A stretch of DNA of 38,418 nt from Macrostomum lignano (GCA_002269645.1 NIVC01004677.1:1-38418), one strand, 5' to 3'. Counted from the stretch's first letter, positions 16,201-38,418 are shown. A program made the numbers and translations. The notes: generated from the sequence alone by a model not told the origin.

Positions 16201-19200
16201 TCCCGGTAGTTTGAGGTATGCGGGGCAGGCAAGTGCTTTGATAAGTATAGATAAGTATTACCAGTATGTTGGATTGCCAGTTGTTTTCCTCGATCCGATC
16301 AAATTAGTTTAACCTTTGATTGTACTTTTACTGCTTGCCGTTGCCCGAGTCAGATATCAGTCATCAGGCCCTGTCTGTATAGGAGGTCATCAGGCCCTGT
16401 CTGTATAGGAGATGATCAGGCCCTGTCTGTATAGGAGGTCATCAGGCCCTGTCTGTATAGGAGGTCATCAGGCCCTGTCTGTATAGGAGGTCATCAGGCC
16501 CTGTCTGTATAGGAGGTCATCAGGCCCTGTCTGTATAGGAGATGATCAGGCCCTATCTGTATAGGAGGTCATCAGGCCCTGTCTGTATAGGAGGTCATCA
16601 GGCCCTGTCTGTATAGGAGGTGATCAGGCCCTGTCTGTATAGGAAGTCATCAGGCCCTGTCTGTATAGGAGATGATCAGGCCCTGTCTGTATAGGAGATG
16701 ATCAGGCCCTGTCTGTATAGGAGGTCATCAGGCCCTGTCTGTATAGGAGGTCATCAGGCCCTGTCTGTATAGGAGATGATCAGGCCCTGTCTGTATAGGA
16801 GGTCATCAGGCCCTGTCTGTATAGGAGGTCATCAGGCCCTGTCTGTATAGGAGGTCATCAGACCCTGTCTGTATAGGAGGTCATCAGGCCCTGTCTGTAT
16901 AGGAGATGATCAGGCCCTATCTGTATAGGAGGTCATCAGGCCCTGTCTGTATAGGAGGTCATCAGGCCCTGTCTGTATAGGAGGTCATCAGACCCTGTCT
17001 GTATAGGAGGTCATCAGGCCCTGTCTGTATAGGAGGTCATCAGGCCCTGTCTGTATAGGAGGTCATCAGACCCTGTCTGTATAGGAGGTCATCAGGCCCT
17101 GTCTGTATAGGAGGTCATCAGGCCCTATCTTCATTAAAAAGCAAGTCCTGTCTTTACAGGTCAATAAACGCTTATTTTTATTCACATTTATTGATATAAT
17201 CATTCGTATTCATTCATATTCATATTTGTACTTACCCACAAATTTTATTCCTCAAAACAACAATCCAGACTGAGCTGTCCCAGGCCCTGCAGAGTCTGTT
17301 AGAGCAAGCAAAATCCGGTTCGGAATTCCTGCAGCGGCTGAAATCCAGTTCAGAGCGAATCAAGGTGAGAAGGAAAGTGAATTTATTGCTGGTATTGAAA
17401 ATATTGTGCCTAATTTGCGTCAAATCTATTAATTTATATAACTTATCCCAGTCCAACCGGGAGGTCATGGCTGCAGCGGTCACAGAGCAGTTTGACTCGC
17501 TGGTGTCTGCTCTGCAGTCAAAGAAGCAGGTGATGCTGAGCCAGCTGGCATCTGAGCAGGAGCACAAGCTCAGGCTCACCAGAGACCAGGCGGCCCAGTG
17601 CGCCTCCTCGCTGGCCAAGGCAACTGGATTGCTGCAGCTGTGCGTTGAGCTGCTCAGGGAGACTGAACCGGCCGCCTTCATCGCGGTGAGAAAGCTGAAG
17701 GCTTGTTGAGGCCAAACTTCAATCTACAGTCTTTATCCACTCCAATCTGCATAAACTACAGTCTTTATCCATTCCAATCTGCATAAACTACAGTCTTTAT
17801 CCATTCCAATCTGCATAAACTACAGTCTTTATCCATTCCAATCTGCATAAACTACAGTCTTTATCCACTCCAATCTGCATAAACTACAGTCTTTATCCAC
17901 TCCAATCTGCATAAACTACAGTCTTTATCCACTCCTATCTACAGTCTTTATCCACTCCAATCTGCATAAACTACAGTTTTTATTCACTCCAATCTGCATA
18001 AACTACAGTCTTTATCCACTCTTATCTACAGTCTTTATCCACTCCAAACTAGTCTTTATCCATTCCAAACTAGCTCGTAGTCTTTATCCACTCCAGACTA
18101 ATCTTTATCCAATCCAATCTACATAAACTACAGTCTTTATCTACTCCAATCTGCAGTCTTTATCCACTCCAAACTACAGTCTGCTCCACACTCGAGCTTA
18201 GAACGGAACCTCCCACCCCCCATCCTCACGCAGGTGTCGGCCGCGATGCAGGACCGGGCGGCCGGCATGCAGCGGAGTCTGCAGCGCCAGACGGAATCCG
18301 GGCCGAGGGTCAGCGAGCAGTTCGAGATCCGCCTGGACCCGGAACCGGTCCTGGTGGCCATCAACAGTCTGGCGTTCTCCGAGCACAAAAGTGAGTTATT
18401 GAGCTGTTTCTTAGACTGATGTTGGGATTAGTCTTTGATTTGCAGGTGAGCTAGTCAGTTGATGATTGACAGGTGAGCTAGTCAGTTGATGATTGATAGG
18501 TGTAGTCAGCTGATAATTGACAGGTGAGGTAGTCAGTTGATGATTGACAGGTGAGCTAGTCAGTTGATGATTGACAGGTGAGCTAGTCAGCTGATGATTG
18601 ATAGGTGAGGTAGTCAGTTGATGATTGGACAGTTGAGCTAGTCAGTTGATTATTGACAGGTGAGCTAGTCAGCTGATGGTTGACAGATGAGCTAATCAGC
18701 TGATAATTGACAGGTGAGCAAGGTGCTTGAAAATCCTTTTGATAAAGAAAAATGCAGCTGAAACCCTGACTGAACCCGCACACACAGACGGGCCAGACCT
18801 ACCGACTGTCTATCACCAGGCCTCAGCCTGCAGCCAGAAAGGTGTTTATCTCAAAGCACTTTGTCATAATAGAGGGTTTTGTTCTGCCCCCATTTAGTTA
18901 GCATATAAATAATGCGAACCCGTCTGCGGTGCTGTGATCCCAGATAATATTTATTAAGTGGCTTAATGCCTGTTCTACCTGAGCTGGCTTATCTGTCTCA
19001 ACTGCTGTGAGCTGCTTTCATTTTCGTTTTTGCGGTTGTGTGAATTTACGTTATTAAATATTATTTTCATTTCATTTTCACCAGCGGCAAATAATTATTT
19101 TCATTTGCCGCTGCATCTGTGCATTGTTGGCCTTTTTTCAGTGTATATCGATACTGTCGTTATGTTGTGATCCTCATTGTTAGTAACGTAAATTTTAACA

Positions 19201-21387: not shown

Positions 21388-22916
21388 TAGGATTTCCCGA
21401 TATCAAATTGTAAGGCTTTTGCACAGTCTGCATGTGCAGCGCGGGGGTTCACCAATCAGAGATGAAAAAATTGAACGGCTGACGGGATTGTTGTTGACGT
21501 CACTAAAACGGAAAAGTCATAAGATTTACTCGCTCCAAGTCTAGTTTAAATTAGGCTCAGTGCTTGTACGTTTTGAGTAACCCAGAAGACAGACTGCTCA
21601 TATCTGCCCATTATTTTCTATGGATTCTGTACAATTCAGTACCGTCACGTCTTCTGTTGCCTGTCATGTTACTGATTGCTGTTATAAATATTTTCATTGA
21701 GCTCTCGCCAAAATCTCCATAGACGACCGGAGCGATCAAAAAGGGGATTTCGCTCCCAGTTGACAGACAGCAGTTGCGCTGCTGAATGTAAATACATTCA
21801 ATGCACAATATATAATCACTTGCAATGAAATCCCTTCCCAGAAATGGGAATAAAATGCCTTTGTTTGTGTTTTATTCCTGCCACCGACCACCTACCTGTG
21901 CGCAGGCTGAGGGGAACGGGCAAGCTATATCGACGCGGTTACCTGGGAGGAAAATGAAATCGGGATAATCGGGGCCAGCATGGCAAAGGGGGTTATTGGG
22001 AGTATTTTATTACCTGGGCTATTCGCAATATCATCGCATTTTAGCCTTGGGTTGCCTTGGCGACGAGGCCCATGCAGCAGCGCTGCGCCATCAATGCTTC
22101 ATTGCTTGGGCACAGGAGAAAGCTGCATTGGAAAGTGCAGAGACGCTGCATCAAGGCTGGCCCAATTTAAGGTAGAAGCTGATCGACAGAAAAAGCTACC
22201 GGCTCTGTATGAATGCACAGAGATTAGACAGTCAGGGCCGGTGTACACTCTTGGTGCGCTTGTATTGTGCTTGTGTCAGCGGAATTGGCACAATTGCCTC
22301 AGCGCAGGTTTTTTGGGATGATATCGCCGAAGTTCTAAAGTTCCCATATGCATGCAAGTTTAGTTGCATAAATAATTCCAAGTGTTGTTATGCATCAGAT
22401 CAAAATTTAGGTCAAGCTAACCACAGAACGTGAAGCTCACACGAGCGATAGTCACTGAATGGAGAATTGGGAGCTCGGCGGCGGCTTTTTCCGATGCAAA
22501 TTTCATTTGGATGACTCAGTGTCCGGGACTCAGCACGCTGCGCACATGACTTGCGCAATCCGGGCGGATCATCCCGTCAGACATTCGGCTTGCGTGAATG
22601 GAGATTTGAACTCGAGTTATCCTCAACAGCCTGTATCCTCAACAGACTATCGTTTTACCAACGATTAGCTATGGTTTGCCCCCGAGAATTATCCCCCATG
22701 TGTACAATGACGTGAGCAGCTATACAGCAAGCTTTGCGACTCAAAGTAATGTTTTGTAGATAATTTTTAGATTGCAAAATTAATTGTGGTAGAGCTTTGG
22801 GAAGATAACTATTTTATTATCTTACAAGCTACTTGCAGTAGCAAGTAGTGTCTTTTGATTCTGTTATAATAGCTCAGATGAAACCTATTGCTAGCGAGAT
22901 GCAGTTCGAATTTACT

Positions 22917-23702
22917 GCGGATGGGAAGGGAGCCGATGGGATGGGAAGGGAGCCGATGGGATGGGAAGGGAGCCGATGGGATGGGAAGGGAGCCGATGGG
23001 ATGGGAAGGGAGCCGATGGGATGGGAAGGGAGCCGATGGGATGGGAAGGGAGCCGATGGGATAGAAAGGGAGCGGATGGGATGGGAAGGGAGCCGATGGG
23101 ATGGGAAGGGAGCGGATGGGATGGGAAGAGAGCGGATGGGATAGAAAGGGAGCGGATGGGATGGGAAGGGAGCCGATGGGATAGAAAGGGAGCGGATGGG
23201 ATGAAAAGGGAGCGGATGGGATGGGAAGGGAGCGGATGGGATGGGAAGGGAGCCGATGGGATAGAAAGGGAGCGGATGGGATGAAAAGGGAGCGGATGGG
23301 ATGGGATGGAGCCGATGGGATGGAATGGAGCCGATGGGATGGGAAGGGAGCGGATGGGATAGAAAGGGAGTGGATGGGGTGGAATGGAACCGATGGGATG
23401 GGAAGGGAGCGGATAGGATGGGAAGGGAGTGGATGGGATGGAATGGAGATGTGAAGGGAGCGGATGGGATGGGAAGGGAGCCAATGGGATTGGATGGAGC
23501 CGATGGGATGGGAAGGGAGCGGATGGGATGGAAAGGGAGCGGATGGGATGGTGGGGGCGGTGGGAGCGGATGGGATGGTGGGAGCGGGTGGGATGGTGGG
23601 AGCGGGTGGGATGGTGGGAGCGGGTGGGGTGGTGGGAGCGGGTGGGATGGTGGGAGCGGATGGGATGGTGGGAGCGGGTGGGATGGTGGGAGCGGATGGA
23701 AT
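22917..23702. repeat. Purine-rich 20-bp satellite (GATGGGATGGGAAGGGAGCC) changing to an 18-bp unit (GGGAGCGGGTGGGATGGT)
   Basis: Direct periodicity; source of many spurious ORFs on both strands. Confidence 0.9.
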
Positions 23703-24467
23703 GGATTGAAGGCCCAAGAGTTGCTCAACTCAAACAGCCCGAACTCCCTAAAATGTTGGTGAACCAGCTGAGAGGCAGGAGAAAAAGGCCACGCTAGTAC
23801 AAAAAATACCGGTACATGTAACTAATTCTGTTCTATCAGTGTGTCCGGTGTTTAACTTTGGTCAAGGCAGTGGGATTTTAGTCCCAAACCAAACGATTGA
23901 TCTGCTGGACAGCGTTGCCTGGGCAACCAACTTCCCGAGTGCAGCTGCAGAGTAATTTTTGTGAACTCATAATCGGTGAGCCATGGGCACAAAGCGTAGA
24001 GTGTTTGACTTTATTAGCAAACATAGCTGGTAGTTGGGTAGCTGCAGCAGAGCCTCTCAGTGCTGGCAATTAGTCAGTCAGTGCGGCGGCCCAGTTCGCC
24101 ACACGATACTGTACGATCCACTGATTCCACTCTGTTGCGGAGCACGCATACACTTTATGCAAGTATCGCGTTTTCTTTCTAAATAAAACAGAAATTGTTT
24201 TAAGCTGAAGCTATGCAAACAAAGAAACGCTGTCTGGTTTTTTTGTGTTTTTTTGGGGGGGATTATTTTTCCTGGGGAAATTAATTTGCTAATTTACGTT
24301 TTCTGTACGCCCTCGCCTCCGGTCTTCCAATTGGCGACTGGGAGAATCTCCTTCCCTGTCCTTCCTTCCTTCCTTTACTGACCAGAGAGCAGCCTTGCTA
24401 TATGTAAGCATCCGGCCTACTGCAGGGGAGCCAACTCAGGCCATTTGGCGTTTTCGACAGCTCGACA

Positions 24468-26742
24468 ATGCAGCCGTCCAGCCCAGGCAAGTCGCGCCAG
24501 TCGCGCCTGGACCTGCTGTACCTGGCCGCTGAGGAGACAACAGCTCACGGACTCAGCCGCACAGTGGGCAACCGGCACCCTGTGGTTCGGGTGCTCTGGG
24601 GCCTGGCCTTCCTCTGCATGCTGGGCGTCTTTCTCAAGCAATTCGTGGACTCCTGCAACCGCCTCTACTCAAAGCCGGTGTCAACCTCAATCGAGCCGAA
24701 CACTGTGGATTTCCAGTTCCCGGATGTGCACATCTGCTCCGTGCCCATTGTGTCGGCCAGTTACGCCTCGCTGATGAGCCCGGCAGATCTGAATTTCACT
24801 GTCGAGCTCATGAAGCAGATTGAAAACCGGCTGAAGGCCGCCAATCTCCCAGTGCTGTACCTCGGCGGTCAGCTGTTCACCGGCAGCCTGCCGTACAACT
24901 TTCTGAGCAGAAACTTCGGCACTCGCAAGGAGCAGTCGGTCATCGGGGCGCTGGTGATGCCAGTGAACACGAATCTGCAGCTCGATGTTGACATTATCGA
25001 CCTGCGGCATCACAAGTACCTGAACTGCTTCACCATGCGGCTGAGGGATCCTTCACTGCACAGCCTGCTGAACAATGTACTGGGCTACCTGGATCTCAAC
25101 CTGTACGCCGATGCCAGCTTCAACCAGAGCGAGATTCTGCGCTACTTCAACAACATCATGGACGTCCGCGGACTAAACTTTGACGTCTACGAGGCCCTGA
25201 TAGGCTCCGGGTTTCGCATATTTTTCACTCCGCGGGGCTACTACCCAGACGATTACAGCCCGTCAGTGACTGTGAGCCCGGGATTCCAGCATCGGATCAG
25301 TCTGAGCATGCTCTACACAGAGTTGACTCCGGACAAGGGCCAGTGCGTTCGCGACAGTCCAGATGTTGTGTACCTGGACCAGTTCACCGGACAGCCCGTC
25401 ACTTACCACTACGATCTGTCTTGTACGTGTGCAGAGTCACATTGGTGTCTCAAGTCAAGCAAATCGTTAGGAGTTTTATTTGGAATTTGGAATTTTGGCT
25501 TTACAGTTTTGGTACGGATTGGTCACTGTGGGATTCAGAGTTTGGTACGGATTGGCACTGGTATTCAGAGTTTGGTACGGATTGGACACTGGGATTCAGA
25601 GTTTGGTACGGATTGGACACTGGTATTCAGAGTTTGGTACGGATTGGACACTAGGATTCAGAGTTTGGTACGGATTGGACACTGGGATTCAGAGTTTGGT
25701 ACGGATTGGTCACTGGGGATTCAGAGTTTGGTACGGATTGGTCACTGGGATTCAGAGTTTGGTACGGATTGGTCACTGGGATTCAGAGTTTGGTACGGAT
25801 TGGACACTGGGATTCAGAGTTTGGTACGGATTGGTCACTGGTATTCAGAGTTTGGTACGGATTGGACACTGGTATTCAGAGTTTGGTACGGATTGGACAC
25901 TAGGATTCAGAGTTAGGTACGGATTGGTCACTGATATTCACTTTAATTTTCGCTTTCACGCAGCTTGCTACGCCCAGTTTATGAACGAGATGTTCAAGAA
26001 TGAATTTGGCTGCTTCCTGCCCGGCTACTCGCCCATCCTGTACGAACACCGGGACCTGCGCTTGTGCAGCAACCTGGCCTACATTGACTCCAACGCCACC
26101 GGTCAGTCAAGGAGTGGAAAGCTGAATTTCCTCTACGGCTTCACCAACGGCACCTTCACGGAGCAGCTGGTTGGCAGCATGCACAAGATGATGGAGCGCT
26201 GCCGGCAGAGGCAGTCCTGCCAGGAGGCCAAGTACGTGTCCAGCCTGAGCTCTATTCGATTCCCGCTGAGTCAGGCCGTCAACAATGAGCTGATCAACAC
26301 TTTCCGTACGCTGAACGGCCACCGAATCGCGAACAACTACTCCATCCCCGGCCGGATGTGGATGCAGCGCCTGTTTGAGTCTGGCGTCAATTCCACAGCG
26401 TCCAGCGCCACTTCGCTTGAGTACGTGCAGGCGGTGGAGGAGAACATTGTCCGGGTGCAGATCCACGCGGGCGAGCTCACGTCCACCTTGTACAGGCAGC
26501 AGATATCCTACCTGCCCAGCGACCTGTTAGCCGGAGTTGGCGGTCTCATGGGTCTCTACATGGGCTGCAGTGTGCTCACCCTGATGGAGCTTCTCGAACT
26601 GCTAGCCGTGCTCATCTACGGGCGTCGTCTTGTCGCCGAACCGTCAGCCGTGACCGATCAGAGTCAGCAGCAGTCGCAGCAGCAGCTCAGTGGGCAGTCG
26701 GGCAGTAAAAGCGACCGTAAGATTGAGCTGGTCACCTTTTAA
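24468..26742 (+). CDS. DEG/ENaC (amiloride-sensitive sodium channel / ASIC-like) family subunit, about 577 aa; exons 24468-25422, 25964-26742
   Basis: Pre-TM1 ETTAHGLSR (HG motif); TM1 VRVLWGLAFLCMLGVFLKQF; PVSTSI..FQFPDVHICS; GFRIFF..VSPGFQ; post-splice YDLS|SCYAQF..FGC; TM2 DLLAGVGGLMGLYMGCSVLTLMELLELL with a G-x-S filter. One phase-1 GT-AG intron, 25423-25963. Confidence 0.93.
25505..25935. repeat. 31-bp minisatellite (GATTCAGAGTTTGGTACGGATTGGACACTGG), about 14 copies, filling the DEG/ENaC intron
   Basis: Direct periodicity, 25591 to 25622. The consensus has no + strand stop codon, which explains the two overlapping long ORFs. Confidence 0.95.
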
Positions 26743-27059
26743 CTACCAGAAGCGAGCAAGAATGCAAGCTCAAACGCTCTTTGATTTTTTTTTCAAAACA
26801 GAAAATTTAAGCATTGAGAAAGTAGAAATTCAGGTCTTACCAAAGGAATTGTTCAATAAAGTTTTGTCGCCACAAATCAGGCTTTGAAGCTACTTAGTAA
26901 GTAGATATTGAAGCACAGGACTTTTGACTGTTAAGTTATCAGTAATGCCATTAGCAGGGCGGAATTCAGTGGTAAACTTTTTGTTTTTTTGCATTCAATA
27001 TTGACCGTTTCTATGTTTAACTTGTAGTCTAAATTTTTCGATTCTTTACTTAGCTGTGT

Positions 27060-28385
27060 TTCACTCTACTCTGCTCTGTTTTACTCTGTTCCACTCTACT
27101 CTACTCTGTTCAACTCTACTCTGTTCCACTCTACTCTACTCTTTTCAACTCTACTCTACTCTGTTCCACTCTACTCTACTCTGTTTCACTCTACTCTGTT
27201 CCACTCTACTCTACTCTTTTCAACTCTACTCTACTCTGTTCCACTCTACTCTACTCTGTTCCACTCTACTCTACTCTTTTCAACTCTACTCTACTCTGTT
27301 CTACTCTACTCTGTTCCACTCTACTCTACTCTTTTCAACTCTACTCTACTCTGTTCCACTCTACTCTACTCTGTTTCACTCTACTCTGTTCCACTCTACT
27401 CTACTCTTTTCAACTCTACTCTACTCTGTTCCACTCTACTCTACTCTGTTCCACTCTACTCTACTCTTTTCAACTCTACTCTACTCTGTTCTACTCTACT
27501 CTACTCTGTTCCACTCTACTCTACTCTGTTTCACTCTGTTCCACTCTACTTTACTCTGTTTCACTCTGTTCCACTCTACTTTACTCTGTTCCACTCTACT
27601 CTACTCTGTTCTACTCTACTCTGTTCCACTCTACTCTACTCTGTTTCACTCTGTTCCAGTCTACTCTACTCTGTTCAACTCTACTCTGTTCCACTCTACT
27701 CTACTCTGTTCCACTCTATTCTACTCTATTCTACTCTACTCTACTCTGTTTCACTCTACTCTGTTCCACTCTACTCTACTCTTTTCAACTCTACTCTACT
27801 CTGTTCCACTCTACTCTACTCTGTTTCACTCTACTCTGTTCCACTCTACTCTACTCTTTTCAACTCTACTCTACTCTGTTCTACTCTACTCTACTCTGTT
27901 CCACTCTACTCTACTCTTTTCAACTCTACTCTACTCTGTTCTACTCTACTCTACTCTGTTCCACTCTACTCTACTCTGTTTCACTCTGTTCCACTCTACT
28001 TTACTCTGTTTCACTCTGTTCCACTCTACTTTACTCTGTTCCACTCTACTCCACTCTGTTCTACTCTACTCTGTTCCACTCTACTCTACTCTGTTTCACT
28101 CTGTTCCAGTCTACTCTACTCTGTTCAACTCTACTCTGTTCCACTCTACTCTACTCTGTTCCACTCTATTCTACTCTATTCTACTCTAGTCTACTCTAGT
28201 CTACTCTACTCTGTTCCACTCTACTTTACTCTGTTCCACTCTACTCCACTCTGTTCAACTCTACTCTGTTCCACTCTACTCTACTTTGTTCCACTCTACT
28301 CTACTCTGTTCCACTCTACTCTACTCTACTCTACTCTGTTCTACTCTGTTATACTATGCTATACTCTACTCTACTTTAATCTACT
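27060..28385 (+). repeat. Pentamer-based satellite (CTCTA/CTGTT/CCACT)
   Basis: Direct inspection; the 377-aa STLLYS ORF is an artefact. Confidence 0.95.
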
Positions 28386-29159: not shown

Positions 29160-29690
29160 GTAGAGAACAACGTAGAACTTAGTAGACACGCGTAGAACAG
29201 GGCAGAACAGAGTAGAGTAGACTAGAGTAGACTAGAGTAGAATAGAGTAGAATAGAGTAGAACAGAGTAGAGTAGACTAGAGTAGAATAGAGTAGAACAG
29301 AGTAGAGTAGACTAGAGTAGACTAGAGTAGAATAGAGTAGAATAGAGTAGAACAGAGTAGAGTAGACTAGAGTAGACTAGAGTAGAATAGAGTAGAATAG
29401 AGTAGAACAGAGTAGAGTAGACTAGAGTAGACTAGAGTATAATAGAGTAGAATAGAGTAGAACAGAGTAGAGTAGACTAGAGTAGAATAGAGTAGAACAG
29501 AGTAGAGTAGACTAGAGTAGAATAGAGTAGAATAGAGTAGAACAGAGTAGAGTAGACTAGAGTAGAATAGAGTAGAATAGAGTAGAACAGAGTAGAGTAG
29601 ACTAGAGTAGAATAGAGTAGAATGTTACGGAGTAGAAAAGCGTAGAACTGTGAAGAATAGAATAGAGTAGAACAGAATTCAGAGTAATAT
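29160..29690 (-). repeat. Same pentamer satellite family as 27060-28385, in inverted orientation (TAGAG/TAGAA/CAGAG)
   Basis: The reverse complement reads CTCTACTCTATTCTACTCTAGTCTACTCTACTCTGTT. Confidence 0.9.
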
Positions 29691-29869
29691 AGCAGTAAAA
29701 CACAGATTAGTTCCCGACTGGACTGATTAGTCACTGCCAGCGCAAATCCATGTGCAAACACTCCTGACAGGACTTCCTTGATGAGGTAATTGGATTACGA
29801 ATAAGCGTTAAGCGATGAATTGGCGATCATATTGCTGGTCTGCTGATTGCCTGAGCGGAACGCTGCACA

Positions 29870-30056
29870 AATCTATGCCTGCTCCGTGAATCTATGCCTG
29901 CTCCGTGAATCTATGCCTGCTCCGTGAATCTATGCCTGCTCCGTGAATCTATGCCTGCTCCGTGAATATATGCCTGCTCCGTGAATCTATGCCTGCTCCG
30001 TGAATCTATGCCTGCTCCGTGAATCTATGCCTGCTCCGTGAATCTATGCCTACTCC
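29870..30056. repeat. 19-bp minisatellite (CTCCGTGAATCTATGCCTG), about 10 copies
   Basis: Direct periodicity, 29882 to 29901. Confidence 0.95.
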
Positions 30057-30547
30057 ACACTTCGCACTAAGTGAATCTACATTCTACACGTATGCCATTC
30101 CAGCTCAAAATTCTACTCGAATTGTTATTATCGTTGACAGAAATCTGTGGAACAGCCGAGTACTGAACACAGTCCGCACTTCCCTCCCCTCTCCCCCTCG
30201 CTCTCCACTGCTGAAGTTACCCAACAGTCAGAGCACAGCCGAGTCCTTAGCACTAATCCCCAGCAGTTCGCCAGCTGTTGCACCAGGGTTCGCAGCGGCA
30301 GGCAGCTCACAGCTTTGCCAAACTTGGAAGGCAAAAATTGTTCTGTCCCTTGAAGAGGCAGCCAGCACAGAGGGGAAAAATAGGCTAGTGGACGATACGC
30401 AGATCCCCAAGCCAACAAGTCAGAACCCAACTCTCTGCCAAAGCGTTTTTAGTCCTGGCGACAACTGGCCTCCTACTGATCGTTAAACCCGCGCTCTCTC
30501 TCTGTTACACTTCCAATTCGACTCGCTAACTAAATTATCGAACAAGA

Positions 30548-33500
30548 ATGAATCTAACAGCCTTGACAACTGTCTGCATACTTTTTCTGATAGCTGTGCA
30601 TCACACAGGTATGTAGCTGAATCAGCATCAATACTTGTACATTAGTTGCAAGAATATTTATATCATATATTATGCCATAGACAAAACCAATCCTGCACAC
30701 CCGGAGAGATCTGTGCCATAGACACAACCAATCCTGCACACCCGGAGAGATCTGTGCCATAGACACAACCAATCCTGCACACCCGGAGAGATCTGTGCCA
30801 TAGACACAACCAATCCTGCACACCCGGAGAGATCTATGCCATAGACACAACCAATCCTGCACACCCGGAGAGATCTGTGCCATAGACACAACCAATCCTG
30901 CACACCCGGAGAGATCTGTGCCATAGACACAACCAATCCTGCACACCCGGAGAGATCTATGCCATAGACACAACCAATCCTGCACACCCGGAGAGATCTG
31001 TGCCATAGACACAACCAATCCTGCACACCCGGAGAGATCTATGCCATAGACACAACCAATCCTGCACACCCGGAGAGATCTATGTCATAGACACAACCAA
31101 TCCTGCACACCCGGAGAGATCTGTGCCATAGACACAACCAATCCTGCACACCCGGAGAGATCTGTGCCATAGACACAACCAATCCTGCACACTCGGAGAG
31201 ATCTATGCCATAGACACAACCAATTCTGCACACTCGGAGAGATCTATGCCATAGACACAACCAATCCTGCACACCCGGAGAGATCTGTGCCATAGACACA
31301 ACCAATCCTGCACACCCGGAGAGATCTGTGCCATAGACACAACCAATCCTGCACACCCGGAGAGATCTGTGCCATAGACACAACCAATCCTGCACACCCG
31401 GAGAGATCTGTGCCATAGACACAACCAATCCTGCACACCCGGAGAGATCTGTGCCATAGACACAACCAATCCTGCACACCCGGAGAGATCTTTGCCATAG
31501 ACACAACCAATCCTGCACACCCGGAGAGATCTGTGCCATAGACACAACCAATCCTGCACACCCGGAGAGATCTATGCCATAGACACAACCAATCCTGCAC
31601 ACCCGGAGAGATCTGTGCCATAGACACAACCAATCCTGCACACCCGGAGAGATCTATGCCATAGACACAACCAATCCTGCACACCCGGAGAGATCTATGT
31701 CATAGACACAACCAATCCTGCACACCCGGAGAGATCTGTGCCATAGACACAACCAATCCTGCACACCCGGAGAGATCTTTGCCATAGACACAACCAATCC
31801 TGCACACCCGGAGAGATCTGTGCCATAGACACAACCAATCCTGCACACCCGGAGAGATCTATGCCATAGACACAACCAATCCTGCACACCCGGAGAGATC
31901 TGTGCCATAGACACAACCAATCCTGCACACCCGGAGAGATCTATGCCATAGACACAACCAATCCTGCACACCCGGAGAGATCTATGTCATAGACACAACC
32001 AATCCTGCACACCCGGAGAGATCTGTGCCATAGACACAACCAATCCTGCACACCCGGAGAGATCTTTGCCATAGACACAACCAATCCTGCACACCCGGAG
32101 AGATCTGTGCCATAGACACAACCAATCCTGCACACCCGGAGAGATCTATGCCATAGACACAACCAATCCTGCACACCCGGAGAGATCTGTGCCATAGACA
32201 CAACCAATCCTGCACACCCGGAGAGATCTATGCCATAGACACAACCAATCCTGCACACCCGGAGAGATCTATGTCATAGACACAACCAATCCTGCACACC
32301 CGGAGAGATCTGTGCCATAGACACAACCAATCCTGCACACCCGGAGAGATCTGTGCCATAGACACAACCAATCCTGCACACTCGGAGAGATCTATGCCAT
32401 AGACACAACCAATTCTGCACACTCGGAGAGATCTATGCCATAGACACAACCAATCCTGCACACCCGGAGAGATCTGTGCCATAGACACAACCAATCCTGC
32501 ACACCCGGAGAGATCTGTGCCATAGACACAACCAATCCTGCACACCCGGAGAGATCTGTGCCATAGACACAACCAATTCTGCACACCCGGAGAGATCTGT
32601 GCCATAGACACAACCAATCCTGCACACCCGGAGAGATCTGTGCCATAGACACAACCAATCCTGCACACCCGGAGAGATCTGTGCCATAGACACAACCAAT
32701 CCTGCACACCCGGAGAGATATGTGCCATAGACACAACCAATCCTGCACACCCGGAGAGATCTGTGCCATAGACACAATCAATCCTGCACACCTGGAGAGA
32801 TCTATGCCATAGACACAACCAATCCTGCACACCCGGAGAGATCTGTGCCATAGACACAACCAATCCTGCACACCCGGAGAGATCTATGCCATAGACACAA
32901 CCAATCCTGCACACCCGGAGAGATCTATGCCATAGACACAACCAATCCTGCACACCCGGAGAGATCTGTGCCATAGACACAACCAATCCTGCACACCCGG
33001 AGAGATCTATGTCATAGACACAACCAATCCTGCACACCCGGAGAGATCTATGCCATAGACACAACCAATCCTGCACATCCGGAGAGATCTATGCCATAGA
33101 CACAACCAATCCTGCACACCCGGAGAGATCTGTGCCATAGACACAACCAATCCTGCACACCCGGAGAGATCTATGCCATAGACACAACCAATCCTGCACA
33201 CCCGGAGAGATCTATGCCATAGACGCAACCAATCCTGCACACCCGGAGAGATCTGTGCCATAGACACAACCAATCCTGCACACCCGGAGAGATCTATGCC
33301 ATAGACACAACCAATCCTGCACACCCGGAGAGATCTATGCCATAGACACAACCAATCCTGCACACCCGGAGAGATCTATGCCATAGACACAACCAATCCT
33401 GCACACCCGGAGAGATCTATGCCATAGACACAACCAATCCTGCACACCCGGAGAGATCTATGCCATAGACACAACCAATTCTGCACACCCGGAGAGATCT

Positions 33501-35467
33501 GTGCCATAGACACAACCAATCCTGCACACCCGGAGAGATCTGTGCCATAGACACAACCAATCCTGCACACCCGGAGAGATCTGTGCCATAGACACAACCA
33601 ATCCTGCACACCCGGAGAGATCTGTGCCATAGACACAACCAATCCTGCACACCCGGAGAGATCTGTGCCATAGACACAACCAATCCTGCACACCCGGAGA
33701 GATCTGTGCCATAGACACAACCAATCCTGAACACAGAAAAAAACTTACATCTTCGGTAGCAAAATCTAATTCAGCAGTTTAAATTTCTGCCTCAACAGAA
33801 CAGCTCACAGCTAATGGGACCATGACTGCTCCGCCGCCGACGACTGCCCATACGACTACGACCGCCCCACCGCCAACGACATCGACAAATTCGACGACAG
33901 CGGCCAGCACGGCCAGCCCGGCCACAACTCGCACCTCAGCAGCCACAACCGCCCAGTCTACCAGTGCATCCACCACCAGTGCATCCACCACCAGCGCATC
34001 CACCACCAGTGCATCCACCACCAGTGCATCCACCACTGCCAAGCCCAGCCCGACAACAACTACTTCTACTACTAGTACTACAACTACTACGTCTACGACT
34101 ACAACTACAACTACCACGGCGGCCACAACTACAGCTAAGAAGAAGCCAAAGCGACTGTGCAAGTTTCCGTTCTGGCATCGGAACGAGTGGCAGCACGAGT
34201 GCATGCCATACGGCTCCAAGGGCGCGCACTGGTGCTCGCTGACTCGGAACTTCACTAGGGATGAGGAGTGGCGAGACTGCGCTAGTGAGCTGGGATTGAG
34301 AGCTGGGATTATTAGGATTGAGAACTGGGATTATTAGGATTGGGAACTGGGATTATTAGGATTGGGAACTGGGATTACTAGGATTGGGAACTGGGATTTC
34401 CGGGATTGGGAACTGGATGACTGGGATTGGGAAGTGGGATTACTGGGATTGGGAAGTGGGATTACTGGGATAACTGGGATTGGGAAGTGGGATTACTGGG
34501 ATTGGGAAGTGGGATTACTGGGATTACTGGGATTGGGAAGTGGGATTACTGAGATTGGGAAGTGGGATTACTGAGATTGGGAAGGGGGATTACTGGGATT
34601 GGGAAGTGGGATTACTGGGATTACTGGGATTGGGAAGTGGGATTACTGAGATTGGGAAGTGGGATTACTGAGATTGGGAAGGGGGATTACTGGGATTGGG
34701 AAGTGGGATTACTGGGATTGGGAAGTGGGATGACTGGGATTGGGAGTGGGATTACTGGGATTACTGGGATTGGGAAGTGGGATTACTGGGATTACTGAGA
34801 TTGGGAAGTGGGATTACTGGGATTGGGAAGTGGAATTACTGGGATTGGGAAGTGGGATTACTGGGATTGGGAAGTGGGATTACTGGGATTGGGAAGTGGG
34901 ATTATTATGATTAGGAATGTGACTGAGAAGTTTGATTTCTGAAGTCCGGAGCTATTAAAGCGCCATCAGAAATATTTCAAACCTGCAGGATACGACCTGA
35001 TGCGGTACAAGTGCTCTGTGCCATTCCACCACGCGGGCAAGACGCACACCGAGTGCCAGCCGCTGCAGCTGGAGCCACTGGCCCGGCGAATCTTCTGGTG
35101 CTCCCTGGTGCCCAGCATCTCCAGCGTCACCTGGGCGAACCTCGGCACCGACTGGACCTTCTGCGAGGCGGCCAACGCCACCGGCCCCGACTACCTGAAA
35201 TCCGTGGCCGGCTATCGTAGCCAGGCCGACGCCCAGATTCACGGTAACCATGGCAACAAGAATGACACAACTATGGCGAAACTTATTGAGCACGCTGTGC
35301 AGCAGGCGGGCGACTCAAAATCGGCGAATTCCGATGGCGACTCCACCGGAAGTGGCGGAGCCGCAGCCGCCACGCCGAGCTCCGTGCTGGGCGTCGCTCT
35401 GGGCATCGTTGGTCTGATCTTGGCCGCTGTGGCCGTGGCGGCCGCCTTTGCCGTGCACAGGAGGTAA
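30548..35467 (+). CDS. Predicted type-I membrane glycoprotein: signal peptide, Thr-rich mucin stalk, two fibronectin type II (FN2) domains, linker, TM; about 341 aa; exons 30548-30608, 33799-34284, 34989-35467
   Basis: Exon 1 encodes MNLTALTTVCILFLIAVHHT with a strong donor (G|GTATGT, phase 1). Exon 2 has a Thr/Ser/Ala run (TTSAS repeats) then CKFPFWHRNEWQHECMPYGSKGAHWCSLTRNFTRDEEWRDC. Exon 3 has CSVPFHHAGKTHTEC..FWCSLVP..DWTFC, then the hydrophobic VLGVALGIVGLILAAVAVAAAFAV-HRR*. Both introns are phase 1 and GT-AG. The exon-2 acceptor could alternatively be 12 nt downstream (exon start 33811). Confidence 0.8.
30672..33729. repeat. 41-bp minisatellite (GCCATAGACACAACCAATCCTGCACACCCGGAGAGATCTGT), about 75 copies, filling intron 1 of the FN2 gene
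   Basis: Direct periodicity; all minus-strand QDWLCLWH ORFs are artefacts. Confidence 0.97.
34290..34915. repeat. G-rich satellite (GGGATTACTGGGATTGGGAAGT modules) filling intron 2 of the FN2 gene
   Basis: Direct inspection. Confidence 0.9.
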
Positions 35468-35559
35468 TTCAGGGGGGTGAGAAACTGTCTCTGATGTGAT
35501 AAGCGCCTTGAGATTTTCTAACTCTTTACTTCAGTGATTAGAGGTCCGCATTTCATGCT

Positions 35560-35930
35560 TCACCATTCACAATTCACGATTCACGATTCACACTTTATCA
35601 TTCACAATTCACGATTCACGATTCACGCTTTATCATTCACGAATCAAGATTCCCGATTCACGATTCACAACTCACGGTTCACGATTCATGATTCACGATT
35701 CACGCTTTACCATTCGCGATTCACGATTCACGCTTCATGATTTGTGATTCACAATTCACACTATACTATTCGTGATTCACGATTCACGCTTTATAATTCA
35801 CGACTCACGATTCATGGTTCACGATTCATGATTCACGATTCACGCTTTACCATTCGCGATTCGTGATTCGTGCTTTAAGATTCACGATTCATAATTCACA
35901 ACTCAAGATTCTCGATTCACGCTTCGTATT
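35560..35930. repeat. Degenerate 7-mer satellite (ATTCACG)n
   Basis: Direct inspection. Confidence 0.85.
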
Positions 35931-36344
35931 CTTAAATTATTGCACGATCTCAGTTCGCCACTTCACACGCTTTTTAAACTACTGTCGAGCTTCATAGTAG
36001 TCTGAAAGGGTTTTTAATTGAAGAATCAAGCTGGGTAAGAATAATTGCTATTAAACGAGCAATCCACCGGGCCCATTCCAGAAATCACACGTTTACTAAT
36101 CATTGAAACTTCATGCTTATAATTATGATCAAACAATACAATTTAAACAGCTCATGCTGCGTGTACGGCATTAACTTAAAATCTGATCGCTTGTGAGCTT
36201 GCCGATCACCATCCAGGGCGCGGGTTTTATTGTTTGATTTTTGAAGTGATTTCATTCAAGAAAGAATTATTCTGCGTCTGCCCATTCAGTGATAAAAATT
36301 AGAGAACTCATTGTGCTTTTCTGTGAATGGATCATCTCAGTGTA

Positions 36345-36657
36345 TTCTCCCTAGATATTAGTCCAGTCTCACTAGATTTCAGTCCAATTCTCACTAGATT
36401 TCAGTCTAGTCTCACTAGATTTCAGTCCAGTCTCACTAAATCTCAGTCTAGTCTCACTAGATCTCATTTCAGTCTCACTAGATCTCAGTCCAGTCTCACA
36501 CTTAGATCTTAGTCCAGTCTCACTCGATCTCAGTAATCTCATTCCAGTCTCACTAGATCTCAGTCCAGTCTCACACTTAGATCTTAGTCCAGTCTCACTA
36601 GATCTCAGTAATCTCAGTCCAGTATCACTAGATCTCAGTACAGTCTCGCTAGATCTC
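36345..36657. repeat. Degenerate ~21-bp minisatellite (TCTCACTAGATCTCAGTCCAG)
   Basis: Direct inspection. Confidence 0.85.
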
Positions 36658-37425
36658 TGGGCTCTGAGTGTCTGTGATGACGAATGTCACTCAATTGTGA
36701 TCAGGCGATATTTCGGTTGCTTGCATAATTTCAATGTACTTCAGTCAAGTTATAAGAAACTTTTATGTATTACTCTACTAATAGTAGAAAGGAAATACGT
36801 TACCAATAAAATCATTAAAATGTTTATTACATCTGCTGCCCTGGAAAAATTAGCAGGTCTTAATCACTTCACTACATAAGGGTTGCAACTTTCTTAGTCA
36901 TTTCTTATAGTTCATCTGCACTCGTCTCTGTTTACTGTTTTCTCTCCCTCTCTGTCCAGTTCAATCTTGTCATTCTTATCTCTCCCATTGCTGCCTTCTG
37001 ATTGGCTGTTCAATCTCGCCTCTTTCCTTAGTCGCGCACTTCACTCCACCCCTCCTTTTCCTATTTGCACTCAACCCCCCAGTTAATGTCTTTTAAATGT
37101 ACCTGTTTAAGTTCATCGCCCTACTTACTGTTTGGTTTCAACTCTAATCGAAAAGTTTTCCTAAATAAAATTTCATCACACAGAGCTGTCAGTTGAAGCA
37201 AAAGCTCGAAAACTCGATGAAAGTGTAGCGTTTACTAAAGGTTATTTTGTTTGTGGAGTTAAATTGCCGCGATATTTCTGAACCATAGGACATCGTGACA
37301 GCCAACATCCGGTTACCGGAAAGACCAACCGAAAAATGATTCCAGCGATCAACCTCTCTATTCTGACAGTATAAAATCAACAGTATTCACAATTGCAGCC
37401 AGTTCCCGGACAAGCATCTCCAATT

Positions 37426-38418
37426 ATGCTGCTAGTAGTTCAACTGTTTCTGCTGTGCTGCTGAATCTGCAGGTGCAGGCATCAGAGTCGTCCAACAACA
37501 GAGCGATGCGAACCAATCGCAGTTCCAATGTGTCAGGGGCTTGGCTACAATTTTACCACCAGACGCATAGTCTGATGGGCAGTGACCAAGAAGAGATTGG
37601 CCTTAATCTGCACTCATTCAGGCCGCTGGTCCAGGTTGGATGCTCAAAGGACCTGAAATTCTTTCTCTGCTCTGCCGCACTTCCGATGTGCGCACCGAGT
37701 TACGCGCGGCCAATTGGTCCATGCCGTCATCTGTGTAAGAGAGCTCGGCGAGGCTGCCGACCCTTGATGCGGAAGTACGGATTCGACTGGCCAAGTATGC
37801 TCAGTGCAGTCGCTTCCCGGATGCTGGAGGAAACAGACTGTGTTTGGGGACCTGGATAGCGGTGGCGGTAGCTTCGGAAGCGGAAGCGCCGACCGAGATG
37901 GGAGCGGAAGCGCCGACCGAGATGGGAGCGAAGCGCCGACCGAGATGGGAGCGGAAGCGCCGACCGAGATGGGAGCGGAAGCGCCGACCGAGATGGGAGC
38001 GGAAGCGGCGACCGAGATGGGAGCGGAAGCGCCGACCGAGATGGGAGCGGAAGCGCCGACCGAGATGGGAGCGGAAGCGGCGACCGAGATGGGAGCGGAA
38101 GCGCCGACCGAGATGGGAGCGGAAGCGGCGACCGAGACGGAAGCGGAAGCGGCGACGAGACGGAAGCGGAAGCGGCGACCGAGACGGAAGCGGAAGCGCC
38201 GACCGAGATGGGAGCGGAAGCGCCGACCGAGATGGGAGCGGAAGCGCCGACCGAGATGGGAGCGGAAGCGCCGACCGAGATGGGAGCGGAAGCGCCGACC
38301 GAGATGGGAGCGGAAGCGCCGACCGAGATGGGAGCGGAAGCGCCGACCGAGATGGGAGCGGAAGCGCCGACCGAGTATGGGAGCGGCAAGCGCGACCGAG
38401 ATGAGAGCGGAAGCGGCG
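37426..38418 (+). CDS. Frizzled-family cysteine-rich domain protein (Frizzled receptor or sFRP-like), 3'-partial, with several apparent frameshifts
   Basis: Frame-joined reading: signal-like MLLVVQLFL/VLLNLQVQAS; ERCEPIAVPMCQGLGYNFT; DQEEIGLNLHSFRPLVQVGCSKDLKFFLCSAALPMC..PIGPCRHLCKRARRGCRPLMRKYGFDWPSML; CSRFPDAGGNRLC. All ten CRD cysteines are present. Indels are needed near 37453, 37500, 37562, 37803 and 37848. No 7TM region lies within the window. Confidence 0.8.
37877..38418 (+). repeat. 24-bp tandem repeat (GGGAGCGGAAGCGCCGACCGAGAT), about 22 copies, probably coding GSGSADRD
   Basis: Direct periodicity; runs to the window end. Confidence 0.9.

What the first reader, a model, noticed from the sequence alone, without database searches (positions are those of the whole stretch)
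30548..35467. Uncharacterised invertebrate surface protein: mucin stalk, tandem FN2 pair, TM and almost no cytoplasmic tail
Both FN2 modules keep four Cys and the aromatic F-P-F / W-C / W pattern. FN2 domains are best known from vertebrates, where they bind collagen/gelatin (fibronectin, MMP2/9, MRC2) or phosphorylcholine (two-FN2 binder-of-sperm proteins). I know no described family with the order signal peptide, O-glycosylated Thr stalk at the N-terminus, FN2, FN2, TM, HRR. The 3-residue tail argues for an adhesion, coat or decoy role rather than signalling, or the C-terminal hydrophobic stretch may be a GPI signal. In a hermaphroditic, adhesive flatworm, candidate roles are sperm-surface or seminal function, glycocalyx, or matrix binding. 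ORF-based annotation would miss the signal peptide because a 3.2-kb repeat intron isolates it.
Basis: partly seen in the sequence, partly recalled or inferred. Interest (0 to 1): 0.75.

Follow-up and report, generated by a model that had tools for sequence, protein, structure and literature searches.

The report
Flatworm membrane protein with two FN2 modules
This is a real, intact Macrostomum lignano gene for a small surface glycoprotein (signal peptide, threonine-rich mucin region, two fibronectin type II modules, membrane anchor) from a small uncharacterised family so far seen almost only in this worm, but the "three-residue tail" comes from reading a splice donor as a stop codon.

Summary
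The three-exon model (30548-30608, 33799-34284, 34989-35467, + strand) gives a clean 341-aa ORF with GT-AG introns. FN2-1 is unambiguous (Pfam 48 bits, E 9e-13). FN2-2 is a divergent FN2 with two loop insertions. Alone it scores below Pfam's cut-off (15 bits), but paralogue scores, a profile-profile match and PDB hits confirm it. Three divergent paralogue groups exist in M. lignano. A full-length mRNA-like contig (P0005) shows the same order: signal peptide, T/A/P-rich region, FN2, FN2, linker, TM. It also carries a conserved ~29-aa cytoplasmic tail (basic cluster, LL, YGGM) on a separate last exon. A 99%-identical database protein (A0A1I8GRR5) splices there to a 29-residue tail exon. That exon is not in the window, so it lies beyond 38418 or is lost in this copy. 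The ectodomain layout matches mammalian binder-of-sperm proteins, and the membrane anchor is the new element. Canonical collagen-binding and phosphorylcholine-binding tyrosines/Arg-Asp are not kept, so the ligand is unknown. This is a new architectural variant of a known module in a narrow lineage, of moderate-to-low interest.

The parts
30548..30608 (+). Exon 1: start codon and signal peptide (MNLTALTTVCILFLIAVHHT + first base of Glu21); donor CAG|GTATGT, phase 1
   Evidence: A phase-1 signal-peptide exon with the same GTATGT donor exists in paralogue locus L001. P0005 mRNA has an N-terminal signal peptide. No direct transcript evidence for this exon.
30609..33798 (+). Intron 1 (3190 nt), almost entirely a 41-bp x 74.7 tandem repeat (30673-33734)
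   Evidence: The minus-strand ORFs listed inside it are repeat artefacts.
33799..34142 (+). Exon 2, first part: Thr/Ala/Ser/Pro-rich mucin-like region (aa 21-135), including a 15-bp x 5 (TSAST)n repeat at 33960-34036
   Evidence: 46% Thr; TRF; 96% identical to the P0001 N-terminus.
33963..33965 (+). Internal alternative donor ACCA|GT used by database model A0A1I8GRR5 (P0001), which skips the rest of the mucin region and FN2-1
   Evidence: P0001 jumps from ..AQST to RYDLMRYKC. Real isoform or prediction artefact is not resolved.
34158..34280 (+). FN2-1 (Cys141-Cys181), canonical fibronectin type II module with Cys spacing 14/11/15 and a conserved NFT sequon
   Evidence: Pfam PF00040 48.4 bits, E 9e-13; PDB hits MMP-2, MMP-9, PDC-109.
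34285..34988 (+). Intron 2 (phase 1) between the two FN2 modules, filled with a 22/44-bp repeat
   Evidence: Same intron position in L001 (81 nt there) and the junction is read through in mRNA L002.
35012..35164 (+). FN2-2 (Cys191-Cys241), divergent FN2 with insertions in the C2-C3 and C3-C4 loops
   Evidence: Pfam 15 bits alone. Paralogue modules 22.8 and 23.0 bits. hhalign against FN2-1 94.6%, E 7e-8. Profile against PDB gives fibronectin FN2 at E 0.005. Foldseek hits on tandem FN2 structures span 107-117 alignment columns.
35165..35209 (+). Family-specific conserved segment E-x-x-N-A-T-x-x-x-Y-L-K-x-V after FN2-2
   Evidence: Invariant E, A, Y, L, K, V in alignment A2; predicted helix in the low-confidence model.
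35210..35377 (+). Low-complexity juxtamembrane linker
35378..35455 (+). Transmembrane helix (aa 313-338), rich in small-xxx-small motifs
   Evidence: Kyte-Doolittle maximum 2.8; aligned TM segments in P0001, P0002 and P0005 and, by reading its sequence, in P0008.
35456..35467 (+). HRR followed by AG|GTAATT. A conserved phase-2 splice donor (35463|35464) whose GTAA supplies the apparent TAA stop
   Evidence: Same position and phase as the L001 donor CG|GTTTGT. P0001 continues past HRR into a 29-aa tail. The tail exon is not found in 35468-38418.

Best explanation
What it is: the locus is an intact member of a small family of type I membrane glycoproteins, so far seen only in Macrostomum. The family gene plan has four exons:
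1. Signal peptide (phase 1 intron follows).
2. Mucin-like Thr-rich region plus FN2-1 (phase 1 intron follows).
3. Divergent FN2-2, a conserved NAT/YLKxV segment, a low-complexity linker, the TM helix and a basic cluster (phase 2 intron follows).
4. A short cytoplasmic tail carrying LL and a near-C-terminal YGGM.

Shown: exons 1-3 are present in the window. The tail exon is not in the window.

Inferred: the mature protein most likely carries the ~30-residue tail seen in the 99%-identical protein A0A1I8GRR5, encoded beyond 38418.

How it most likely works (inferred):
- The FN2 pair sits about 70 residues above the membrane, under a heavily O-glycosylated N-terminal brush.
- Each module keeps the two Trp that line the ligand-binding depression described for other FN2 domains (W165/W178 and W219/W238). 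The pair would capture an extracellular ligand, either an extended hydrophobic or Pro-rich peptide or a cationic head-group.
- The conserved tail matches the YxxPhi (YGGM) and di-leucine consensus by inspection. It would couple the protein to clathrin adaptors for internalisation or sorting.
- Overall it would act as a miniature capture-and-uptake receptor. Its ectodomain is laid out like binder-of-sperm proteins and its logic resembles Endo180 or endolyn.
For: - Gene model and splice sites.
- FN2-1: Pfam 48 bits; PDB hits to MMP-2, MMP-9 and PDC-109.
- FN2-2: paralogue modules pass the Pfam cut-off; hhalign 94.6%, E 7e-8; profile against PDB hits fibronectin FN2 at E 0.005; Foldseek top hits are all tandem-FN2 structures at E 2e-4 to 7e-4, on a low-confidence model.
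- Family: HMMER of the exon-3 product against 1.84 billion representatives finds only P0001, P0002 and P0003. The profile search adds the full-length P0005. All named members are M. lignano.
- Conserved residues: 8 Cys, PFW, WCS, NFT-DE-W, FWC, DW-x-x-CE, YLK-V.
- Conserved exon plan: L001 has a signal-peptide exon, an FN2-1|FN2-2 intron and a TM|tail intron at the same places and phases. mRNA L002 aligns to L001 in blocks that break at those borders.
- Tail conservation in P0001, P0002 and P0005.
- BSP layout: PMC4476173. Short tails with endocytosis motifs in FN2-bearing mannose-receptor family members: PMC4635314.
Against: - No transcript of this exact locus was available. Exon 1, the choice between donor 34284 and donor 33963, and use of donor 35463 are therefore inferred from paralogues.
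- The tail exon is not in the 2.95 kb downstream. An Fz-domain sequence on the same strand starts at about 37.43 kb, which makes a very long last intron awkward.
- One database model of another paralogue (P0008) also ends right after HRR (..AVHRRYF), so tail-less products cannot be excluded.
- The ligand is untested. The Endo180 collagen-critical residues (Y193, R206/D208) and the PDC-109 phosphate-binding Tyr have no equivalents here (H147/F172 and H197/I226).
- A conserved N-glycan sequon (N171-F-T) sits next to F172, the equivalent of PDC-109 binding-site Tyr54.
- The sorting motifs are short and could be chance. The di-leucine acidic residue is present only in P0005.
- The AF2 model is low confidence (pLDDT 55).
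Confidence: 0.55

Rival explanations
1. This copy is a truncated paralogue that has lost the tail exon. The transcript reads through the donor, stops at TAA, and yields a tail-less TM (or GPI-processed) surface protein. It would act as a passive coat, adhesion or decoy molecule, which is essentially the first reader's reading.
For: No tail exon anywhere in the window. An Fz-domain sequence starts about 2 kb downstream on the same strand. The GTAA donor gives an immediate in-frame stop. Database model P0008 of another paralogue ends ..AVHRRYF. Small residues (GSGGAAAATPSS) precede the hydrophobic segment, as a GPI omega region would need.
Against: The donor AG|GTAATT is intact and sits at the conserved intron position and phase. 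The 99%-identical P0001 has the tail. No canonical AATAAA lies within 1.3 kb; the nearest ATTAAA is at 36050 and the nearest AATAAA at 36805. The Fz sequence shows frame disruptions and could be a pseudogene lying inside an intron. The family has a basic stop-transfer cluster, which is typical of true TM proteins (own knowledge).
Confidence: 0.2
2. The locus is a non-expressed or decaying duplicate (pseudogene) in a highly duplicated, repeat-invaded genome.
For: Both introns are swollen by satellites. The neighbouring Fz sequence has frame shifts. No NCBI-annotated protein and no Logan transcript product for this exact gene exist in the protein collection. The tail exon is missing from the window.
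Against: All three exons are open. All splice sites are canonical. Every family-invariant residue is kept, including all 8 Cys. The differences from P0001 are 3 of 212 residues with no disruptions.
Confidence: 0.1
3. The membrane form is a precursor. The ectodomain is shed by cleavage in the low-complexity linker and acts as a soluble BSP-like FN2-pair protein, for example in seminal fluid or mucus, binding cell surfaces or matrix.
For: The ectodomain layout equals that of BSP proteins (PMC4476173). The only non-flatworm hit of the pair profile is a BSPH1-like protein. A long unstructured juxtamembrane linker is present.
Against: No protease site or shedding evidence was found. The conserved cytoplasmic tail argues for a function of the membrane-bound form. 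The phosphate-binding Tyr residues of BSP are not conserved.
Confidence: 0.1

Closest known systems
Binder of sperm (BSP) proteins: PDC-109/BSP1, BSP5, BSPH1
   Same: [quoted passage not shown]
- FN2-1 has exactly the Cys spacing of PDC-109 domain b (14/11/15).
- Both cation-pi Trp positions are kept in both modules.
- A bat BSPH1-like protein is the only outside hit of the pair profile (E 1e-7).
- PDC-109 gives the only PDB hits for FN2-2 alone.
   Different: - BSPs are small secreted mammalian proteins. This protein adds a ~70-aa linker, a TM helix and, in the family, a cytoplasmic tail.
- The phosphate-binding Tyr residues (Y30/Y54, Y75/Y100; PMC2823774) are H147/F172 and H197/I226 here.
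- FN2-2 has two loop insertions.
- Similarity does not extend beyond the FN2 modules, so orthology is not shown.
Collagen/gelatin-binding FN2 modules of MMP-2/MMP-9 and fibronectin
   Same: These give the best sequence hits in the PDB for the pair (E 2e-11 to 1e-7) and the best Foldseek hits. They share the four-Cys and aromatic pattern (CxFPF, WC, W near C4).
   Different: There is no catalytic or FN1 context. The GRxDG loop with the Arg/Asp pair is absent from both modules, and the C1+6 Tyr is His. Equivalents of these residues are critical in Endo180 (PMC4635314).
Endo180/uPARAP and the mannose receptor family
   Same: Type I membrane receptors that use an FN2 module for ligand capture and have short cytoplasmic tails with endocytosis motifs (PMC4635314). 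The family tail here has YGGM and LL.
   Different: No ricin-B or C-type lectin domains (Pfam finds only fn2). The protein is about 10 times smaller, has two FN2 modules rather than one, and lacks the collagen-critical residues.
Small membrane sialomucins such as endolyn/CD164 (own knowledge, not tested here)
   Same: Layout of a mucin domain, a Cys-rich module and a stalk, followed by a TM helix and a short tail with a YxxPhi motif near the C-terminus that drives endosomal/lysosomal sorting.
   Different: The Cys-rich module there is not FN2. There is no sequence relationship, so this is an analogy of design only.
FN2 modules previously reported in flatworm contexts: turbellarian VAL proteins and the planarian nidovirus PSCNV
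   Same: FN2 modules in free-living flatworms (PMC3435950). In PSCNV a Thr/Ser-rich region sits adjacent to FN2a, with a second FN2b (PMC6211748).
   Different: These have different architectures (an SCP/TAPS domain, or a viral polyprotein). No viral relatives of this pair were found, and the PSCNV sequence itself could not be compared here.

Membership tests
Fibronectin type II domain (PF00040) | Profile score above the curated cut-off (22.2 bits) | tested here: met
   FN2-1 scores 48.4 bits, E 9e-13. FN2-2 of the window scores 15 bits alone (not met on its own), but the orthologous module in two paralogues scores 22.8 and 23.0 bits, and hhalign of FN2-2 against FN2-1 gives 94.6%.
Fibronectin type II domain (PF00040) | Four Cys plus conserved aromatics (C-x-x-P-F, W-C, W three residues before C4) | tested here: met
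   Cys at 141/155/166/181 and 191/205/220/241, with PF, W165/W219 and W178/W238; invariant across the family.
Fibronectin type II domain (PF00040) | Two perpendicular two-stranded sheets with 1-3 and 2-4 disulfides (fold) | tested here: inconclusive
   The AF2 model of the P0005 pair reaches only pLDDT 55. Its Foldseek top hits are nevertheless all tandem-FN2 structures. Disulfide connectivity is not testable here.
Binder of sperm (BSP) superfamily | Variable glycosylated N-terminal part followed by exactly two tandem FN2 modules with a short linker | tested here: met
   114-aa region with 46% Thr, then FN2, a 9-residue linker and FN2. BSP definition taken from PMC4476173.
Binder of sperm (BSP) superfamily | Small secreted protein ending after the second FN2 module | tested here: not met
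   A further ~100 residues follow, including a 26-residue TM helix. Homologues also carry a cytoplasmic tail.
Binder of sperm (BSP) superfamily | Phosphorylcholine site: two Trp plus two Tyr per module (W47/W58/Y30/Y54 and W93/W106/Y75/Y100) | tested here: not met
   The Trp positions are kept. The Tyr equivalents are H147/F172 and H197/I226. Positions were mapped through the PDC-109 alignment and the numbering in PMC2823774.
Collagen/gelatin-binding FN2 (Endo180, MR, MMP-2 type) | Critical residues equivalent to Endo180 Y193, R206/D208, Y219, W225, F227 | tested here: not met
   FN2-1 has H147, no R-x-D in the C2-C3 loop (MPYGSKGAHW), F172, W178 and D180. FN2-2 has H197, an expanded loop without R-x-D, I226, W238 and F240 (PMC4635314).
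Mannose receptor family | Ricin-B domain, one FN2 module and 8-10 C-type lectin domains | tested here: not met
   Pfam finds only fn2 in the 341-aa product.
   Family members have a basic stop-transfer cluster and a conserved ~29-aa tail, which argues for a true TM anchor. No GPI predictor was available, so a tail-less product of this copy cannot be formally excluded.
Macrostomum FN2-FN2-TM family (defined here: P0001, P0002, P0003/P0008, P0005) | Invariant residues of the FN2 pair, the E-x-x-NAT-x-x-x-YLK-x-V segment, and the TM helix | tested here: met
   Alignments A1 and A2. Exon-3 product against P0002 gives E 6e-20 and against P0003 gives E 9e-11.
Macrostomum FN2-FN2-TM family (defined here) | Terminal exon encoding the LL...YGGM tail | tested here: not met
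   Not present in the window. The conserved donor that leads to it is present (35463|35464).

The most novel reading that the evidence does not exclude
A flatworm lineage independently built, or retains, a membrane-anchored version of the binder-of-sperm design: a glycosylated N-terminal part plus an FN2 pair. The protein would function in reproduction, for example in sperm-surface or female-tract recognition in this hermaphrodite. Tail-bearing and tail-less forms, produced at the GTAA donor by splicing versus read-through, would switch it between an internalising receptor and a static coat or decoy. A further possibility is that host genes of this kind were the source of the Thr-rich + FN2 segment of the planarian nidovirus.
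Probability: 0.12. Interest if true: 0.6.

Novelty: new variant of a known kind. Interest (0 to 1): 0.33.

Why it matters
- It adds a clear protostome example of tandem FN2 modules in a domain order not described before: a BSP-like ectodomain on a TM anchor with a conserved sorting-type tail. FN2 was once thought to be vertebrate-specific (view quoted in PMC3435950).
- It is a tractable candidate for a matrix- or lipid-binding surface receptor in a model flatworm where RNAi and in situ hybridisation are routine (own knowledge).
- It is a practical annotation lesson. All public models of the family are partial. They lack the signal-peptide exon, skip FN2-1, or stop in the last intron. Satellite-filled introns and a GTAA donor that mimics a stop codon are the probable reasons.
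- The biological stakes are modest, because the family is narrow and its function is unknown.

Tried and rejected
- AF2 on FN2-2 alone without an alignment gave pLDDT 46 and was unusable.
- AF2 with the 5-sequence family alignment reached only pLDDT 55. It was used only as weak support through Foldseek.
- Spliced sequences could not be submitted to the representative search, structure prediction or contig look-up, so exon-wise translations and paralogues were used instead.
- Exact look-ups found nothing for P0001 or for the window's two exon ORFs. The locus of P0001 and any extension of this locus therefore could not be retrieved.
- Tail exon searches all failed: tblastn with word size 2, motif scan and a tail HMM against all six frames.
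- There is no synteny between L001 and the window.
- Viral contigs, BFVD folds and JGI metagenome contigs gave no relatives.
- The third word-indexed protein search, with the pair profile, returned only P0003 and one bat BSPH1-like protein. A broad census of FN2 architectures in invertebrates was therefore not obtained.
- Literature searches for the gene identifier and for FN2 in Macrostomum found no characterisation. Many 'fibronectin type II' hits were really type III.
- Rejected: membership of the mannose receptor or gelatinase families (no accessory domains).
- Rejected: the 'mucin stalk' description, because the mucin region is distal to the FN2 pair.


Full report
**1. Observation**

The window is eukaryotic and repeat-laden. 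Joining 30548-30608, 33799-34284 and 34989-35467 on the + strand gives a 1026-nt ORF of 341 codons. The splice sites are CAG|GTATGT...AACAG|AA and CTA|GTGAGC...TGCAG|GA, both in phase 1.

- Intron 1 (3.19 kb) is almost wholly a 41-bp unit repeated 74.7 times at 97% identity.
- Intron 2 is a 22/44-bp repeat.
- Only about 64 nt of unique sequence flank the satellite on each side. A signal-peptide exon therefore cannot hide inside intron 1.

The product, in order:
- A hydrophobic N-terminus (MNLTALTTVCILFLIAVHHT).
- A 114-residue segment with 46% Thr, 18% Ala and 18% Ser, which includes a (TSAST)5 repeat.
- Two four-Cys modules (141/155/166/181 and 191/205/220/241).
- A ~70-residue low-complexity linker.
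- A 26-residue hydrophobic helix (aa 313-338).
- HRR, then TAA.

**2. Are the FN2 modules real?**

FN2-1 is unambiguous.
- PF00040 scores 48.4 bits, E 9e-13, over the full profile.
- The best solved-structure matches are MMP-2, MMP-9, PDC-109 and fibronectin.

FN2-2 alone is sub-threshold.
- It scores 15 bits, E 0.026, against profile positions 1-32.
- Its only PDB hits are PDC-109, at non-significant E-values.

Four further results settle FN2-2.
- The same module in two paralogues passes Pfam's cut-off on its own (22.8 and 23.0 bits against 22.2).
- A profile of the four FN2-2 sequences aligns to the profile of the four FN2-1 sequences at 94.6% probability, E 7e-8. The alignment pairs all four Cys and shows an 8-residue and a 6-residue loop insertion.
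- The FN2-2 profile hits fibronectin FN2 in the PDB at E 0.005, and 11 of its 13 hits are FN2 proteins.
- A low-confidence AF2 model of the pair (pLDDT 55) retrieves only tandem-FN2 structures at the top of a Foldseek search. These are 3mql, 1l6j, 1eak and 1h8p, at E 2e-4 to 7e-4, with 107-115 alignment columns.

FN2-2 is therefore a divergent FN2 module.

**3. Relatives and what they show**

The 5.8-billion-protein word search with the FN2-to-TM region found one protein, P0001.
- It is UniRef A0A1I8GRR5, a Macrostomum lignano 'Fibronectin type-II domain-containing protein'.
- It is a 242-aa fragment and is 99% identical over exon 3.

Full HMMER of the exon-3 product against 1.84 billion representatives added only P0002 (37% identity, E 6e-20) and P0003 (44%, E 9e-11). 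A profile search added P0005.

- P0002 is NCBI PAA67322.1, BOX15_Mlig033966g2.
- P0003 heads a cluster of four M. lignano UniRef entries that includes P0008.
- P0005 is a 318-aa complete ORF on a 1487-nt Logan contig (L002, run SRR30276812; organism not stated).

P0005 has the following order:
- Signal peptide.
- A ~65-aa T/A/P-rich region.
- FN2-1.
- FN2-2, with the same insertions.
- The conserved segment, a linker and a TM helix.
- The tail RRRRRSGKDRKSLLESREKGTYGGMEASD.

The four-way alignment has 42 invariant columns. These include all 8 Cys, PFW, WCS, NFT-DE-W, FWC, DW..CE and YLK.V.

No relatives were found in viral contigs, viral predicted folds or JGI metagenomes. On present data the family is restricted to Macrostomum. 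It has at least three divergent paralogue groups in M. lignano.

**4. Gene plan and the 'stop codon'**

In paralogue locus L001 (GCA_002269645.1, NIVC01001493.1) tblastn and direct reading give four coding blocks:
- A signal-peptide exon, ATGAAC...AATGGAG|gtatgt, phase 1.
- A mucin plus FN2-1 exon.
- An 81-nt intron exactly between the two FN2 modules.
- An exon running through the TM to ..ATCCGCAAGCG|gtttgt, phase 2.
- An 837-nt intron, then a terminal exon encoding RRNGQHKALLQTREKGTYGGMEASN.

The L002 mRNA aligns to L001 in three blocks that break at those borders. The splice pattern is therefore transcript-supported at family level.

In the window the equivalent point reads GTGCACAGGAG|GTAATT. 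P0001 continues there with NQYKRIDPLLSSEQGADKSSYGGMQAYHD. That sequence aligns with the P0002 and P0005 tails through LL and YGGM(E/Q)A.

The 'almost no cytoplasmic tail' feature, and with it the GPI suggestion, is therefore not a property of the family. It is most likely an artefact of ORF reading.

The caveat is real, however.
- No tail-coding sequence exists anywhere in the window.
- An Fz-domain sequence begins about 2 kb downstream on the same strand.
- Another database model (P0008) ends ..AVHRRYF.

The exon may lie beyond 38418, may be missing from this assembly, or may have been lost in this copy. I rate the tailed form about 0.55 and a genuinely tail-less product about 0.2.

**5. Other model issues**

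- P0001 starts at the first full codon of exon 2. It has Thr where the window has Met29, so that copy needs an upstream start. This agrees with a separate signal-peptide exon but does not prove this one.
- P0001 also jumps from ..AQST to RYDLMRYKC. It uses an internal donor ACCA|GT at 33963|33964 inside the TSAST repeat and skips FN2-1. Whether that is a true isoform or a prediction artefact cannot be decided here. All other members retain FN2-1.
- Public models are all partial. P0001 lacks the signal peptide and FN2-1. P0002 starts inside FN2-1, apparently because of a frame break in the mucin exon of L001. P0008 probably runs into the last intron.

**6. Likely function**

Shown: it is a type I membrane glycoprotein with an N-terminal mucin-like brush and a membrane-proximal FN2 pair.

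Residue mapping gives the following. PDC-109 numbering comes and PMC2823774. Endo180 numbering comes from PMC4635314.
- FN2-1 has the Cys spacing of PDC-109 domain b (14/11/15).
- Both modules keep the two pocket Trp (W165/W178 and W219/W238).
- The Tyr residues that hydrogen-bond phosphate in PDC-109 are H147/F172 and H197/I226 here.
- The Endo180 collagen-critical Tyr193 and the Arg206/Asp208 pair have no equivalents. DEC-205, which lacks these three, is not believed to internalise collagen (PMC4635314).
- A family-invariant N-F-T sequon lies at the position of the usual N-Y-D.

The aromatic groove is thus preserved, but neither canonical ligand can be assumed.

Inferred: the conserved tail fits the YxxPhi consensus (YGGM) and has a di-leucine (own knowledge of adaptor motifs). 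This parallels the short endocytic tails of FN2-bearing mannose-receptor family members (PMC4635314).

My best mechanistic guess is a small capture-and-internalise or sorting receptor. Rivals are a static coat or decoy (a tail-less copy), a shed BSP-like soluble protein, and a silent duplicate.

**7. Comparison with known families**

- The only non-flatworm hit of the pair profile is a BSPH1-like protein.
- The membership tests for 'secreted, ends after FN2-b' and for the phosphorylcholine Tyr residues fail. It resembles a BSP in layout, but I do not file it as a member.
- It is not a mannose-receptor or gelatinase family member, because it has no accessory domains.
- FN2 in free-living flatworms was already noted in VAL proteins (PMC3435950) and discussed for the planarian nidovirus. 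That virus has a Thr/Ser-rich region next to FN2a (PMC6211748). This is an intriguing parallel that I could not test.

**8. Verdict**

This is a real gene and a real FN2 pair. The architecture is a new variant built from known parts, in a narrow lineage, with no functional data. Interest is about 0.33.

Noticed in passing
window 37426-37859 (+): Frizzled-type cysteine-rich domain (PF01392, 71.8 bits for ORF 37455-37859). The signal-peptide-like MLLVVQLF, the CEPIAVPMC...GYNFT start of the CRD and the rest of the CRD lie in different frames, with a shift between 37557 and 37566. This is either a pseudogene or assembly indels. It sits where a long last intron of the FN2 gene would have to run.
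   Followed up: partly
window 24468-26742 (+): Amiloride-sensitive sodium channel (DEG/ENaC, PF00858) gene in two coding blocks (profile positions 2-295 and 298-455). The blocks are separated by a tandem repeat at about 25.40-25.95 kb that stays open in frame and inflates the mechanical ORFs.
   Followed up: partly
window 4450-4830 (+): Terminal part of an AAA+ ATPase (PF00004 C-terminal part plus AAA_lid_3).
   Followed up: partly
window 20167-20600 (+): Weak SPRY-like match (17 bits, below the cut-off) followed by a Pro-rich tandem repeat. Cys-rich and coiled-coil-like ORFs lie upstream at 10895-11518 and 17365-17709, but neither has any Pfam hit, so a link between them is unverified.
   Followed up: no
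window 33960-34036 and 33963|33964: A 15-bp x 5 coding repeat (TSAST)n inside the mucin exon carries a GT at each unit. The first is used as a donor in UniProt model A0A1I8GRR5, which removes FN2-1 from that model.
   Followed up: partly
window 8000-10000, 13500-14500, 19250-21100, 22800-23800, 27000-28200, 29200-30060, 35559-35925, 36334-36657, 37879-38415: Very dense short-period tandem repeats with strong strand skew. They generate many long spurious ORFs on both strands in the ORF list. The 24-bp repeat at 37879-38415 runs to within three bases of the window end.
   Followed up: no
L001 9690-9900: The mucin exon of the paralogue BOX15_Mlig033966g2 changes reading frame midway (AAAATTSTT... 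in one frame, ...TTPTKPAVTTGK in another). This probably explains why the NCBI model starts at an internal Met inside FN2-1. It is an assembly indel or a real frameshift.
   Followed up: partly
P0008 (UniRef A0A1I8ICH7), no DNA available: This paralogue model ends ..CAVHRRYF, immediately after the same HRR as the window. This suggests a second case where a gene model runs into the last intron, or else genuinely tail-less family members.
   Followed up: no
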